From Octopus sinensis (taxonomy: Eukaryota): a stretch of 64,000 bases of DNA. Under the pieces are notes generated by a model. That model was not told the origin of the DNA, ran no database searches, and worked only from the letters and a program-made list of their open reading frames with translations. A program made the position numbers and the translations under genes. How positions within the stretch are numbered: the stretch's first letter is position 1; each line of letters opens with the position of its first letter. Location of the stretch: positions 12,086 through 76,085 of the forward strand of contig NW_021835461.1 in NCBI RefSeq assembly GCF_006345805.1, given 5' to 3'. Shown piece by piece: positions 28,290 through 48,785 of the stretch.

Positions 28290-30581
28290 AAAAAATTTTT
28301 CGGAAATTTTACCCAAAAATTTTCACCGAAATTTTTCGAAAATTCTTGCCGAAAATTTTACCCACAAATTTTTAGAAAATTTTACCCAATAATTTTCACC
28401 GAAATTTTTAGAAAATTTTTTCCGAAAATTTTACCCAAAAAATTTCACCGAAATTTTTTGAAAATTCTTGCCGAAAATTTTACCCAAAAATTTATCGAAA
28501 ATTTTGCTCAAAAATTTTCACCGAAATTTTTTCGAAAATTTTTGCTGAAAATTTTACCCAAAAATTTTTCGAAAATTCTTGCCGAAAATTTTACCCAAAA
28601 CTTTTCACCGAAATTTTTCGAAAATTTTACCCACAAATTTTTCGAAAATTTTACCCAATAATTTTCACCGAAATTTTTAGAAAATTTTTTCCGAAAATTT
28701 TACCCAAAAAATTTCACCGAAATTTTTTGAAAATTCTTGCCGAAAATTTTACCCAAAACTTTTCACCGAAATTTTTCCAAAATTTTTGCCGAAAATTTTA
28801 CCCAAAAAATTTTCACCGAAATTTTTCGAAAATTTTTGCTGAAAATTTTACCCAAAAATTTTTCGAAAATTTTTGCCGAAAATTTTACCCAAAACTTTTC
28901 ACCGAAATTTTTCGAAAATTTTACCCACAAATTTTTCGAAAATTTTACCCAATAATTTTCACCGAAATTTTTGGAAAATTCTTGCCGAAAAGTTTACCCA
29001 AAAATTTATCGAAAATTTTACCCACAAATTTTCACCGAAATTTTTCAAAAATTCTTGCCGAAAATTTTCGAAAATTTTCGGCAAGAATTTTCGAAAAATT
29101 TCGGTGAAAATTTGTGGGTGAAATTTTCGAAAAATTCTTTTTGTAAAATTTTCGAAAAATTTCTGTGGATTTTACCCAAAATTTTCCACCGAAATTTTTT
29201 GAAAATTTTACCAAAAATTTTTCCAAAATTTTCCACCAAAATTTACCCAAAGAATTTTTCCAAAATTTACCCAAAAATTTTCACCGAAATTTTTCGAAAA
29301 TTCTTGCCGAAAATTTTACCCACAAATTTTTAGAAAATTTTACCCAATAATTTTCACCGAAATTTTTAGAAAATTTTTTCCGAAAATTTTACCCAAAAAA
29401 TTTCACCGAAATTTTTTGAAAATTCTTGCCGAAAATTTTACCCAAAAATTTATCGAAAATTTTACCCAAAAATTTATCGAAAATTTTGCTCAAAAATTTT
29501 CACCGAAATTTTTTCGAAAATTTTTGCCGAAAATTTTACCCAAAAATTTTTCGAAAATTCTTGCCGAAAATTTTACCCAAAACTTTTCACCGAAATTTTT
29601 CGAAAATTTTACCCACAAATTTTTCGAAAATTTTACCCAAAAATTTTCACCGAAAATTTTCGAAAATTCTTGCCGAAAATTTTACCCAAAAATTTATCGA
29701 AAATTTTACCCACAAATTTTCACCGAAATGTTTCAAAAATTCTTGCCGAAAATTTTCGAAAATTTTCGGCAAGAATTTTTCGAAAAATTTCGGTGAAAAT
29801 TGTGGGTGAAATTTTCGAAAAATTCTTTTTAGTAAAATTTTCGAAAAATTTCTGTGGATTTTACCCAAAAATTTTCCACCGAAATTTTTCGAAAATTTTA
29901 CCAAAAATTTTTCCAAAATTTTCCACCAAAATTTACCCAAAGAATTTTTCCAAAATTTACCCAAAAATTTTCACCGAAATTTTTCCAAAATTTTGCCGAA
30001 AATTTTACCCAAAGATTTCCACCGAAAATTTTCGAAAATTTTCACCGAAAATTTTACCAAAAGCGTTTCGAAAATTTTCCACCAAAATTTTTCGAAAATT
30101 TTACCCAACATTTTTCGAAAATTTTCCCAAACACTTTTCGAAAATTTTCCACCAAAATTTACCCAAAGAATTTTTCGAAAATTTTACCCAAAAATTTTCA
30201 CAGAAATTTTTCGAAAATTCTTGCCGAAAGTTTTACCCACAAATTTTCACCGAAATTTTGCGAAAATCTTTGCCGAAAATTTTGCGCAAAAATTTTCAAC
30301 CAAATTTTCCGTGCAAATTTTGGGAAAAATTTTACCCAAAAATTTCCACCGAAATTTTTCGAAAATTTTACCAAAAATTTTTCGAAAATTTTCCAAGAAA
30401 ATTTTACAAAAAATTTTTCCAAAATTTTCAAATTTTCCCAAAGAATTTTTCGAAACTTTTACCCAAAAATTTTCACCGATATATTTCGAAAATTTTTGCA
30501 AAAATTTTACCCAAAATAATAATAATAATAATAAGGAATAATAGTAATAATAACACCGATAATAATAATAAGAAGAAGAAG

Positions 30582-30623
<42 letters not shown>

Positions 30624-46100: not shown

Positions 46101-48785
46101 AATTTTGCCCAAAAATTTTCAACCAAATTTTCCGTGCAAATTTTTGAGAAAAATTTTACCCAAAAATTTCCAACGAAATTTTTCGAAAATTTTACCAAGA
46201 ATTTTTCCAAAATTTTCAAATTTTCCCAAAGAATTTTTGCCGAAAAGTTTACCCAAAAATTTGAACAAATTTTAAAAAAATTCTTGCCGAAAGTTTTACC
46301 CACAAATTTTTCAAAAATTTTACCCAAAAATTTTCACCGATATATTCCGAAAATTTTTGCCGAAAATTTTACCGAAAAATTTTCAACGAAATTTTTCGAA
46401 AATTCTTGCCGAAAATTTTACCCAAAATAGTAATAATAATAATAAGGAATAATAGTAATAATAACACCGATAATAATAATAATAATAATAATAAGATTAA
46501 GAATAATAATAATAATAATAAGAAGAAGAATAATAATAATAATACTAATAATATTAGTAAGAATAATAATAAGAAGAAGAATAAGAATAATAAAGAGAAT
46601 AATGATAATAATAATAATAATAATAGGATGAATAAGAAGAACAAGAATAATAATAATGATAATAATAATAATTAGATGAATAAGAAGAACAAGAATAAGA
46701 ATAATAATAATAAGAAGAAGAATATTAATAAGAATATTAAGAATAATAATAATAAGAAAAATTGTAATAATAATATTAATAATAAAATAATAATAATAAG
46801 AAGAAGAATAATAAAAATAATAATAAGAAGAAGTAGAATAAGAATAAGATAATAATGATAAGACAGACGAAGAAAAAATTTTCCACGAAAATTTTCCCAA
46901 AAATTTTCAAAAATTTTCAAATTTTCCCAAAGAATTTTTCGAAATTTTACCCAAAAAATTTTCACCGATATATTTCGAAAATTTTTGCCGAAAATTTTAC
47001 CCAAAAATTTTCAACGAAATTTTTGGAAAATTCTTACCGAATATTTTACCCAAAATAATAATAATAATAATAATAATAATAAGGAATAATAGTAATAATA
47101 ACACCGATAATAATAAGATTAATAATAATATAATAATATAATACTAATAATATTAATAAGAATAATAATAATAAGAAGAATAAGAATAATAAAGAGAATA
47201 ATAATAATAATAATAATAAAAATAATAATAATAATAATAAGACGAATGAGAAGAACAAGAATAATAATAATGATAATAATAATAATCAAATAATAATTAG
47301 ATGAATATAAGAAGAACAGAATAAATCATATAATAATAATAAGAAGAAGAATATTAATAAGAATAATAAGAAAATAATAAGAAGAAAAATTGTAATAATA
47401 ATATTAATAATAAAAATAATAATAATAAGAGAGAAGAAGAATAAAAATAATAATAAGAAGAAAAAGAATAAAGATATAATAATAAGACAAAGAAAATAAT
47501 AATAATAAGAATAATAATACTAAGAGAAGAAGAAGATAAATAATAATAAGCATAACAATAATAATAATAATAATAATATTAATAATAATAATAATAATAA
47601 TAAAATATAAAAAGCAGAACAATAAGAATAATATAATAATAATAGTAATAATAATAATGAAATAATAATAATAAGAATAATAAGAATAAAAAGAAAGATA
47701 ATAATAAAAATAATTACAAGAAGAATAATAAAAATTTCCGAAAATTTTACCCAAAAAATTTCACCGAAATTTTTCGAAAATTCTTGCCGAAAATTTTACC
47801 CAAAAATCTATCGAAAATTTTGCCCAAAAAATTTCACCTAAATTTTTCGAAAATTCCTGCCGAAAATTTTACCCACAAAGTTTTCGAAATTTTACCCAAA
47901 AATTTTCACCGAAATATTTCGAAAATTTTTGCCGAAAATTTTACCCAAAAATTTTTCGAAAATTTTTGCCGAAAATTTTACCCAAAAATTTTTCGAAAAT
48001 TGTTGCCGAAAATTTTACCGAAAAATTTTTACGGAAATTTTTCGAAAATTCTCTTTTTGGGTAAAATTTTACCCACAAATATTTTGAAAATTGTACCCAA
48101 AAATTTTCACCGAAATTTTTCGGAAAATTTTACCCAAAAATTTTTGAAAAATTTTCACGAAAATTTTTTCGAAAATTGTTGCCGAAAATTTTACCCAAAA
48201 ATTTTCACCGAAATTTTTCGAAAATTCTTGCCGAAAGTTTTACCCACGAATTTTCACCGAAATTTTTCGAAAATCTTTGCCGAAAATTTTGCCCAAAAAT
48301 TTTCAACCAAATTTTCCGTGCAAATTTTTGAGAAAAATTTTACCCAAAAATTTCCAACGAAATTTTTCGAAAATTTTACCAAGAATTTTTCCAAAATTTT
48401 CAAATTTTCCCAAAGAATTTTTGCCGAAAAGTTTACCCAAAAATTTTAAACGAAATTTTTTGAAAATTCTTTCCGAAAGTTTTACCCACAAATTTTTCAA
48501 AAATTTTCACAGAAATTTTTCGAAAATTCTTGCCAGAAATTTTACCCAAAAATTTTCACCGAAATTTTTACAAAATTTTTTCGGAAAATTTTACCCCAAA
48601 AATTGCACCGAAATTTTTCGAATATTCTTGCCGAAAATTTTACCCAAAAATTTATCGAAAATTTTGGCCATAAATTTTCACCGAAATTTTTCGAAAATTT
48701 TTGCCGAAAATTTTACCCAAAAATTTTTCGAAAGTTTGCACGGAAAATTTACACCGAAATTTTTCGAAAATTTTATCCAAAAATA
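28290..48785 (+). repeat. Higher-order compound satellite: A4T4/CCGAAA satellite blocks alternating with homologous AAT/AAG blocks
   Basis: Common ~49-bp unit GCCGAAAATTTTACCCAAAAATTTTCACCGAAATTTTTCGAAAATTCTT; junction AATAAAAATTTCCGAAAAT at ~31281, 34060, 36798, 38714, 40644, 43352, 45544 and 47734. Confidence 0.95.

What the first reader, a model, noticed from the sequence alone, without database searches (positions are those of the whole stretch)
28290..48785. Two-component higher-order satellite: A4T4 satellite and AAT/AAG blocks co-amplified in strict alternation
Seen: ~16 A-tract satellite blocks (0.13-2.2 kb) alternate with ~15 AAT/AAG blocks (0.4-0.9 kb). Junctions are stereotyped (TTTTACCCAAAA|TAATAAT on exit; AATAAAAATTTCCGAAAA or AGACGAAGAAAAAATTTTC on entry). 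The AAT blocks share landmarks (AATAACACCGATAAT, 14 copies counted by eye; ATTAGATGAATAAGAAGAACAAG; AAGAAAAATTGTAAT), so they are homologous copies rather than independent microsatellites. One junction repeats at 2779, 2738, 1916, 1930, 2708, 2192 and 2190 bp spacing, mostly in matched pairs. Inference: successive unequal-exchange duplications of a composite monomer, possibly a structural (heterochromatin or centromere-like) domain. I do not recognise this as a described family.
Basis: partly seen in the sequence, partly recalled or inferred. Interest (0 to 1): 0.75.

Follow-up and report, generated by a model that had tools for sequence, protein, structure and literature searches.

The report
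Octopus two-part tandem repeat array
A 20-kb stretch of an Octopus sinensis contig consists of one junction between an A/T-tract satellite and a degenerate AAT microsatellite, copied 17 times by nested tandem duplications; this is a real but ordinary higher-order repeat, with no evidence that it is a centromere.

Summary
Window 28290-48782 holds 17 blocks of a satellite (S) with a 12.16-bp period. These alternate strictly with 16 AAT/AAG blocks (M, 401-920 bp).

All 17 S-to-M junctions are homologous. The M blocks share ordered landmarks, and composite segments spanning both parts are 91-96% identical. Unrelated AAT arrays are about 78% identical.

The window is not from a shrimp, as I first guessed. 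It is Octopus sinensis contig VCDQ01000053.1, an unplaced 76-kb PacBio contig.

The best explanation is local, nested tandem segmental duplication by unequal exchange between internally repetitive blocks:
- An old S|M junction was duplicated as a roughly 0.62-kb piece.
- This gave a unit [long S, truncated M, short S, M], which was then amplified in 1.9-2.8-kb steps.

The hallmark of a higher-order repeat is met. Neighbouring 49-mers within S match 63-71%, while homologous S blocks are 92-99.7% identical.

A centromere or heterochromatin role is neither supported nor testable here. I found no published description of the satellite, but I could not check Repbase/Dfam or the rest of the genome.

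Verdict: a new member of a known kind, of modest interest. The main caveat is that the structure is unverified against long reads in an error-prone assembly.

The parts
28290..30516 (+). S1, the longest satellite block (2227 bp). It has a 12-nt sub-unit AAAATTTTNCCN with 24/37/49/73-nt higher periods. It contains a roughly 700-bp internal duplication and two short inverted patches.
   Evidence: TRF; segmentation; orientation scan
30517..33292 (+). Proximal composite unit P1 = M1 (30517-31276), S2 (31277-32091), M2 (32092-32976), S3 (32977-33292).
   Evidence: Segment 30224-33931 matches 32986-36784 at 91.3% over 3.8 kb, offset 2762.
33293..36120 (+). Proximal composite unit P2 = M3 (33293-34055), S4 (34056-34871), M4 (34872-35791), S5 (35792-36120). 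It is a tandem copy of P1.
   Evidence: M1/M3 95% and M2/M4 94% identical; S2/S4 99.1% substitution identity
36121..36793 (+). M5, a transitional M block between the proximal and distal parts of the array.
   Evidence: J5 branches between the groups
36794..38709 (+). Distal higher-order unit U1 = S6 (long), M6 (C-type, truncated at GACGAAGAAAA), S7 (short), M7 (D-type). Length 1916 bp.
38710..40639 (+). Distal unit U2 = S8, M8, S9, M9. Length 1930 bp.
   Evidence: Segment 38925-40635 matches 40817-42530 at 95.8%.
40640..43347 (+). Distal unit U3 = S10, M10, S11, M11, S12, M12. Length 2708 bp, with one extra short-S/M pair.
   Evidence: Segment 39879-42709 matches 42579-45457 at 95.1%, offset 2700.
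43348..45539 (+). Distal unit U4 = S13, M13, S14, M14. Length 2192 bp.
   Evidence: Segment 43537-46423 matches 45747-48596 at 93.9%, offset 2210.
45540..47729 (+). Distal unit U5 = S15, M15, S16, M16. Length 2190 bp.
47730..48782 (+). S17, the terminal long satellite block.
48783..55673 (+). A 6.9-kb AAT/AAG array. Its first ~50 bp are a diverged homologue of the M head (junction J17, 23-29% K2P from the others). A SINE fragment is inserted at 50161-50338.
24787..25847 (+). Upstream AAT/AAG block M'. Its tail (25567-25800) is homologous to 49030-49290.
25853..26352 (.). Upstream satellite block S'. It runs in + orientation to about 26145 and then in reverse orientation, forming a dyad. About 87% identical to internal parts of the long S blocks.
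29000..29139 (.). A 140-nt near-perfect palindrome inside S1 (arms 70 nt, 94% complementary, no spacer). A degraded copy lies at 29688-29827.
   Evidence: DNA fold -65.2 kcal/mol, z = -16.3

Best explanation
This is a locally amplified, non-coding composite tandem repeat in Octopus sinensis. A single ancestral boundary between an A/T-tract minisatellite (S) and a degenerate (AAT)n-derived block of about 760 bp (M) has been copied again and again.

**Mechanism.** Both parts are internally repetitive, so sister chromatids or homologues (or a replication fork) can pair out of register. Each unequal exchange or template switch then duplicates or deletes a segment containing both parts.

**Steps shown by the sequence:**
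1. All S|M junctions descend from one junction.
2. An older duplication of about 0.62 kb joined M position ~440-460 (GACGAAGAAAA) to a point ~180 bp before the end of S, through an A-run microhomology. This created the unit [long S, truncated M, short S, M].
3. That unit, and a related proximal unit [M, S, M, short S], were later amplified in steps of 1.9, 2.2 and 2.7-2.8 kb, in several registers. One 2.7-kb step explains the odd six-block unit U3.

**Inferred, not shown:** the exchange mechanism itself, and that the array is selectively neutral rather than functional.
For: **Homology across both parts.**
- Composite self-matches are 91-96% identical over 1.7-3.8 kb and cross both S and M. The AAT-versus-AAT background is about 78%.
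- All 17 junctions are homologous, with diagnostic variants that separate long-S exits from short-S exits.
- M landmarks are collinear in every copy.

**Hierarchy of divergence.**
- M identity groups are A (M1, M3), B (M2, M4), C (M6, M8, M10, M13, M15) and D (M7, M9, M11, M12, M14, M16).
- Junction-anchored K2P distances are 1-4% within groups, 5-9% between C and D, 10-14% between proximal and distal, and 23-29% to the outgroup junction J17.
- Short S corresponds to the last 175-187 bp of long S at 87-89% identity, so it is older than the amplification of the unit.

**Higher-order repeat signature.**
- Long S blocks are collinear at 92.4-99.7% substitution identity, with gaps of 12, 36 and 37 nt.
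- The 49-nt period within a block matches only 63-71%.

**Orientation and coding.**
- Orientation is uniform on the + strand across the array.
- No protein or RNA family matches S.
Against: - The source is an unplaced 76-kb contig of a PacBio continuous-long-read assembly.
- Copies differ by many 1-bp indels. This is typical of residual read error, so copy number and some divergence values may be unreliable.
- No reads could be inspected.
- No orthologous array could be obtained from O. vulgaris. The only related locus found is collinear for just 4.1 kb.
- Gene conversion can mimic or blur the duplication order inferred from the distances.
- Nothing here excludes a function, such as chromatin organisation or small-RNA production.
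Confidence: 0.78

Rival explanations
1. The array is a tandem cluster of a non-autonomous Helentron/Helitron-type element (HINE, pearl or DTC84 type). In molluscs these elements carry a microsatellite next to a short central array of satellite-like repeats and can themselves be repeated in tandem.
For: - Mollusc HINE and DTC84 elements have a microsatellite segment adjoining central tandem repeats and a 3' palindrome, and whole elements may be repeated in tandem (PMC3879986, PMC7492417).
- The order here is also microsatellite then tandem repeats.
- The upstream copy reads M' -> S'(+) -> inverted S', and S1 contains a 140-nt palindrome.
Against: - The S|M and M|S junctions are direct. No conserved non-repetitive left or right flank modules or subterminal inverted repeats lie between blocks.
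- The palindromes are built from S itself and are absent from 15 of the 17 blocks.
- M blocks are 0.4-0.9 kb, far longer than the short eroded microsatellites of HINEs.
- The short S and truncated M are explained by one illegitimate junction, not by element ends.
Confidence: 0.08
2. The array is part of a functional structural domain, such as a centromeric or pericentromeric satellite or another heterochromatin block.
For: - The sequence is very AT-rich (GC 13-25%).
- It has phased A-tracts, higher-order repeat organisation and palindromes, all of which are common in centromeric satellites.
- The contig is unplaced, as satellite-rich regions often are.
Against: - There are only 11 kb of S and 9.5 kb of M.
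- Ordinary SINE, LINE and MITE copies and a PARP14-like gene lie within 25 kb.
- S was absent from the other ~100 kb fetched in loci L001-L004. About 62 kb of that is octopus sequence: 50.5 kb of O. vulgaris (L002) and the ~12 kb of L003 outside the window.
- The 12.16-bp period is out of phase with the helix.
- No chromatin or cytological data exist.
Confidence: 0.07
3. The alternation, or its copy number, is an assembly artefact of a long-read assembler working through low-complexity sequence.
For: - It is an unplaced small contig of a PacBio-based assembly.
- There are abundant 1-bp indels between copies.
- The window ends at the contig end.
Against: - Copies differ by consistent, phylogenetically structured substitutions and block-specific landmarks. 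Artefactual duplication would not create these.
- Collapse, the usual error, would lower the copy number rather than invent the alternation.
Confidence: 0.07

Closest known systems
Higher-order repeats (HORs) of satellite DNA, e.g. primate alpha satellite
   Same: Diverged adjacent sub-units (63-71% here) are grouped into a multi-part unit. That unit is repeated head to tail at much higher identity (92-99.7% for S, 91-96% overall). The model of generation by unequal exchange is also the same.
   Different: - The unit mixes two unrelated repeat classes, a 12/49-nt minisatellite and an AAT-derived block.
- The unit length is not fixed (1.9-2.8 kb).
- The array is only about 20 kb.
- No centromere association is shown.
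Tandem-repeat-containing non-autonomous Helentrons of molluscs (pearl, DTC84, Cg_HINE; PMC3879986, PMC7492417)
   Same: The host is a mollusc, a microsatellite segment directly adjoins a short array of satellite-like repeats, and palindromes are present.
   Different: - No flanking modules or subterminal inverted repeats occur at the unit borders.
- The microsatellite part is hundreds of bp long and itself conserved as a unit.
- Copies are contiguous rather than dispersed, as far as can be seen.
Compound SSRs and satellite/microsatellite combinations described in penaeid shrimp (compound SSRs: PMC8126689; the PVS1 satellite/microsatellite combination is recalled from memory and was not checked)
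   Same: Different simple repeats are linked head to tail in an AAT-rich genome context.
   Different: - The host is a different phylum.
- The two parts here are co-duplicated as a frozen unit with conserved landmarks, not just adjacent arrays.
- S has a 12-nt rather than a 1-6-nt motif.
Macrosatellites and tandem segmental duplications (kb-scale units such as human D4Z4)
   Same: The tandem units are kb-sized and moderately diverged, with variable copy number expected from unequal exchange.
   Different: The units contain no gene or unique sequence and are built entirely of lower-order repeats.

Membership tests
Higher-order repeat satellite organisation | Units arranged head to tail in one orientation | tested here: met
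   All blocks are on the + strand, with strict S/M alternation.
Higher-order repeat satellite organisation | Identity between homologous positions of different units is much higher than between neighbouring monomers within a unit | tested here: met
   92.4-99.7% between long S blocks, against 63-71% for the 49-nt period within blocks.
Higher-order repeat satellite organisation | Fixed order of distinguishable sub-units within the unit | tested here: met
   The order [long S, C-type M, short S, D-type M] recurs 5 times. The groups are recovered by the identity matrix and the tree.
Centromeric satellite | Long homogeneous arrays (hundreds of kb to Mb) at one site per chromosome | tested here: not met
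   The array is 20.5 kb (33 kb including adjacent AAT) on a 76-kb contig with TEs and a gene nearby. The window, and with it the contig, ends about 8 kb beyond the AAT array, so an extension elsewhere cannot be excluded.
Centromeric satellite | Occupancy by the centromeric histone, or location at the primary constriction | not testable with these tools
   No chromatin or cytogenetic data are available.
HINE / pearl / DTC84 tandem-repeat-containing Helentron derivatives | Microsatellite segment adjoining a central array of satellite-like repeats | tested here: met
   M directly abuts S at every junction.
HINE / pearl / DTC84 tandem-repeat-containing Helentron derivatives | Left and right flanking modules with subterminal inverted repeats bounding each element | tested here: not met
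   The junction alignments show no non-S, non-M sequence between blocks.
HINE / pearl / DTC84 tandem-repeat-containing Helentron derivatives | 3' palindrome in the right module | tested here: inconclusive
   Palindromes occur only in S1 (29000-29139, 29688-29827) and at the S' dyad, and they are made of S itself.
HINE / pearl / DTC84 tandem-repeat-containing Helentron derivatives | Many dispersed genomic copies with target-site duplication | not testable with these tools
   No octopus genome could be searched by DNA. S is absent from loci L001-L004.
Compound microsatellite | All components are 1-6-nt motif arrays joined head to tail | tested here: not met
   S has a 12.16-nt fundamental period with 49/73-nt structure.

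The most novel reading that the evidence does not exclude
The S|M pair may not be a one-off local duplication. It could instead be the standard building block of a genome-wide octopus repeat family. That family could be spread by a mobile element or by extrachromosomal circles, or it could mark a specific chromatin domain, centromere-proximal or otherwise. The phased A4T4 tracts, which return to helical register every 73 and 147 bp, could impose a defined DNA shape.
Probability: 0.1. Interest if true: 0.55.

Novelty: new member of a known kind. Interest (0 to 1): 0.3.

Why it matters
Cephalopod satellites and centromeres are essentially undescribed. The repeat studies I could read for octopus and cuttlefish discard simple and tandem repeats or lump them together. 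This locus gives a clean, datable example of how a higher-order repeat can be assembled from two different low-complexity sequences by nested unequal exchanges.

It also provides ready-made probes, the S 49-mer and the S|M junction, for asking where such sequence lies in octopus chromosomes. In itself it is an expected product of known mechanisms and changes no current view.

Tried and rejected
1. **Penaeid shrimp origin.** I first assumed this from the AAT/CT/AT richness and a 68% hit of a reverse-transcriptase tail to Penaeus indicus. It was rejected. Two RRM exons match O. sinensis and O. vulgaris PARP14-like proteins at 96-98%, and the window is 100% identical to O. sinensis contig VCDQ01000053.1.
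2. **Searches for the satellite elsewhere.**
   - Two exact-pattern scans of viral contigs gave no hits.
   - A 24-mer scan of metagenome contigs gave no hits.
   - A 17-mer scan of metagenome contigs gave only single chance hits.
   - A full-text search for the motif gave one unrelated microsporidian paper.
3. **Translating S and searching proteins.** The aim was to find S-derived ORFs in other assemblies.
   - The word-indexed search found nothing.
   - The exhaustive search found only ~20%-identity periodic matches.
   - It also found one unrelated (GAAAAATTTTTC)n-like array in a JGI metagenome contig.
4. **Orthologous locus in O. vulgaris.** L002 matches window 1-4102 at 96.5% and then diverges, so it is probably a paralogue or a rearranged region. 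No array was recovered.
5. **Rfam.** There were no matches in the window.
6. **Indel lengths in M.** I tested whether they are mostly multiples of 3, as slippage would predict. Only 14-30% are. Single-base indels dominate, which points to assembly error or homopolymer slippage.
7. **Left border.** I considered an inverted M head at the left border (the ATT array at 28160-28289). The resemblance is weak and I did not pursue it.
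Full report
**Source of the window**

Two exon-like ORFs on the minus strand (3438-3707 and 1638-1898) encode RRM repeats of a PARP14-like protein. They match Octopus sinensis LOC115231254 at 98% and an O. vulgaris PARP14-like protein at 96%.

The DNA fetched around the O. sinensis gene is 100% identical to window 1-13620. 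This places the window at positions 12086-76085 of contig VCDQ01000053.1, a 76,085-bp contig of assembly GCA_006345805.1. The window ends where the contig ends. According to the title of its paper, as cited, that assembly was built from PacBio reads and Hi-C.

My first guess was a penaeid shrimp. It rested on the simple-repeat content and a 68% hit of a retrotransposon tail, and it was wrong.

**Checking the observation**

*Block structure.* TRF reports an alternation of period-3 AAT arrays with arrays of period 12/24/37/49/73 between 28291 and 48784. My own segmentation, anchored on the junction strings, gives these figures:
- 17 satellite blocks (S1-S17, 135-2227 bp, 11.0 kb in all).
- 16 AAT/AAG blocks (M1-M16, 401-920 bp, 9.5 kb in all).
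- Strict alternation throughout.

The 15-mer AATAACACCGATAAT occurs 14 times where shuffles predict 0.02.

*Junctions.* All 17 S-to-M junctions align with one another. They carry diagnostic variants that separate exits from long S blocks (…GCCGAAAATTTTACCCAAAATAGTAAT…) from exits from short S blocks (…TTACCGAATATTTTACCCAAAATAATAAT…).

*M blocks.* They are homologous copies, not independent microsatellites:
- They average 85.4% pairwise identity, and 91-96% within subgroups.
- Random pieces of the neighbouring AAT array score 78.0 +/- 1.3%, and triplet-shuffled M scores 71.7%.
- They share up to seven landmarks in the same order.

**Anatomy**

*The satellite S.*
- It is an A/T-tract satellite with a fundamental period of 12.16 bp by Fourier analysis.
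- Self-identity peaks at lags 12, 24, 37, 49 and 73.
- The 49-mer consensus is CCGAAAATTTTACCCAAAAATTTTCACCGAAATTTTTCGAAAATTTTTG.
- Composition is A 0.386, T 0.352, C 0.182, G 0.080. CpG is three times over-represented.

*The block M.* It is an A-rich (64% A), degenerate AAT/AAG block whose full form is about 760 bp (M1, M3).

*Proximal part.* After S1 comes a pair of composite units:
- P1 = M1-S2-M2-S3 (30517-33292).
- P2 = M3-S4-M4-S5 (33293-36120).
- They are 91.3% identical over 3.8 kb at offset 2762.

*Distal part (36794-47729).* It holds five units of the form [long S ~0.9 kb, C-type M ~0.45 kb, short S ~0.18 kb, D-type M 0.4-0.67 kb]:
- The unit lengths are 1916, 1930, 2708, 2192 and 2190 bp.
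- The 2708-bp unit carries one extra short-S/M pair.
- C-type M blocks all stop at the internal landmark GACGAAGAAAA, where they are joined to S through an A-run (entry string 2).
- The short S is the last 175-187 bp of the long S, at 87-89% identity.

*Orientation.* It is uniformly + strand, except for two short inverted patches inside S1.

**History and mechanism**

A tree of junction-anchored segments (130 nt of S plus 400 nt of M) gives a clear hierarchy of K2P distances:

| Comparison | K2P distance |
|---|---|
| Within groups | 1-4% |
| C-type versus D-type junctions | 5-9% |
| Proximal versus distal | 10-14% |
| Junction at 48775 (leads into the 6.9-kb AAT array) versus all others | 23-29% |

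The simplest reading has three steps:
1. There was one ancestral S|M boundary.
2. An illegitimate, microhomology-type duplication of about 0.62 kb made the short-S/truncated-M pair.
3. Repeated unequal exchanges then occurred in several registers. The registers seen are about 1.9, 2.2 and 2.7-2.8 kb.
   - 38925-40635 matches 40817-42530 at 95.8%.
   - 43537-46423 matches 45747-48596 at 93.9%.
   - 39879-42709 matches 42579-45457 at 95.1%; this last match explains the six-block unit.

The classical signature of a higher-order repeat is present. Homologous long S blocks are collinear at 92.4-99.7% substitution identity, with gaps of 12, 36 and 37 nt. The 49-nt repeat inside a block matches only 63-71%.

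*Rough dating.* One paper equates a Jukes-Cantor distance of 0.09 from consensus with 25 My in octopus (PMC13282606). On that scale:

| Layer | Approximate age |
|---|---|
| Youngest copies | A few My |
| Oldest internal split | 15-20 My |

This is an inference with large uncertainty. Low-complexity alignment, gene conversion and assembly error all affect it.

*Shown versus inferred.* The common descent of the copies and the nesting order are shown by the sequence. Unequal crossing-over or template switching as the agent is an inference from established models of tandem-repeat evolution.

**Function**

- No ORF in S has relatives, and no Rfam family matches.
- The 12.16-bp A-tract period is out of phase with the 10.5-bp helical repeat. 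Planar bending is therefore not expected. Register returns about every 73 bp (6 units, 6.95 turns) and 147 bp (12 units, 14 turns). This is arithmetic only and has not been tested.
- Nothing supports a centromere. The array is small, and SINE-like, LINE and MITE-like elements surround it. The 5' end of a PARP14-like gene lies about 25 kb away.

I therefore rate the locus as most likely a neutral by-product of repeat instability.

**Comparison with known systems**

*Organisation.* It is a higher-order repeat or macrosatellite-like tandem duplication array, and all three defining features tested were met.

*Closest mollusc precedent.* The nearest case of a microsatellite linked to satellite-like repeats is the HINE/pearl/DTC84 group of non-autonomous Helentrons (PMC3879986, PMC7492417). 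The adjacency feature is met. The defining flank modules with subterminal inverted repeats are absent at the unit borders, so I do not file the array there.

*Literature.* I found no description of this satellite or of any octopus satellite in the searchable library. Repbase and Dfam could not be queried.

**Caveats**

- The structure comes from one unplaced contig of an error-prone long-read assembly.
- Single-base indels dominate the differences between copies.
- No reads, no second individual and no orthologous array could be examined. The O. vulgaris locus that shares the gene is collinear for only 4.1 kb.
- The satellite was not found in viral or metagenome collections or in the other loci fetched. 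These collections are not suited to finding octopus DNA.

**Verdict**

The unequal-exchange interpretation is supported, and the centromere-like interpretation is not. This is a new member of a known kind, of modest interest.

Noticed in passing
It runs in + orientation to about 26145 and then flips to the reverse orientation, forming a dyad. An AAT array (24787-25847) precedes it.
   Followed up: partly
window 29000-29139 and 29688-29827: A 140-nt near-perfect palindrome lies inside S1 (70-nt arms, 94% complementary, no spacer). The DNA fold gives -65.2 kcal/mol and z = -16. A degraded copy lies about 690 bp downstream, showing a ~700-bp internal duplication of S1.
   Followed up: partly
window 17226-17963 (-), 24317-24786 (+), 50161-50338 (-), about 4508-4796; also L002 and L003: A SINE-like dispersed element with an (ATC)n head, the motif TGGATGCCCTTCCTAACGCCAACCACTC and an internal 61-67-bp tandem repeat. 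Two copies are inserted into AAT arrays. Copies at 80-96% identity occur in the O. vulgaris locus.
   Followed up: partly
window 22480-23027: A MITE-like element of about 548 bp with terminal inverted repeats of ~86 nt (95-97% complementary). It ends exactly where the first AAT array starts. Similar internal sequence recurs near 21589-21834.
   Followed up: partly
window 1638-1898 (-) and 3438-3707 (-): Two RRM-repeat exons of a PARP14/PARP10-like gene (O. sinensis LOC115231254). They identified the organism.
   Followed up: yes
window 55674-56511 (+): The 3' part of a non-LTR retrotransposon ORF (reverse-transcriptase tail; some homologues carry PF13966). It abuts the right edge of the 6.9-kb AAT array directly. 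Relatives at 60-68% identity are widespread, including in Penaeus.
   Followed up: partly
window 25567-25800 versus 49030-49290: The tail of the upstream AAT block and a stretch near the start of the 6.9-kb AAT array share rare landmarks (e.g. AAAAAGAATGAGAAT, AAGAATAACAATAAT). The pairwise alignment averages 86% column identity. This suggests an older duplication bracketing the whole array.
   Followed up: partly
S blocks, window 28290-48782: CpG is three times over-represented in the satellite (observed/expected 3.06). Nearly every 12-nt sub-unit ends in CG or CCG.
   Followed up: no
window 28160-28289: The left border of S1 is an (ATT)n tract, which is the reverse-strand form of the AAT blocks. 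It may be an inverted remnant of an M head, but the resemblance is weak.
   Followed up: no
L004 760-1050 (JGI metagenome 3300022690 contig Ga0247388_10057519): An unrelated eukaryote-like contig carries a ~300-bp array of (GAAAAATTTTTC)-like 12-13-nt repeats. This shows that A-tract/T-tract short tandem repeats of this style arise elsewhere, and it is not the same family.
   Followed up: partly
window 27672-27860: A run of different microsatellites, (TATC)n, (CT)n and (AT)n, lies head to tail just upstream of the array, in the 1.9-kb stretch between S' and S1.
   Followed up: no
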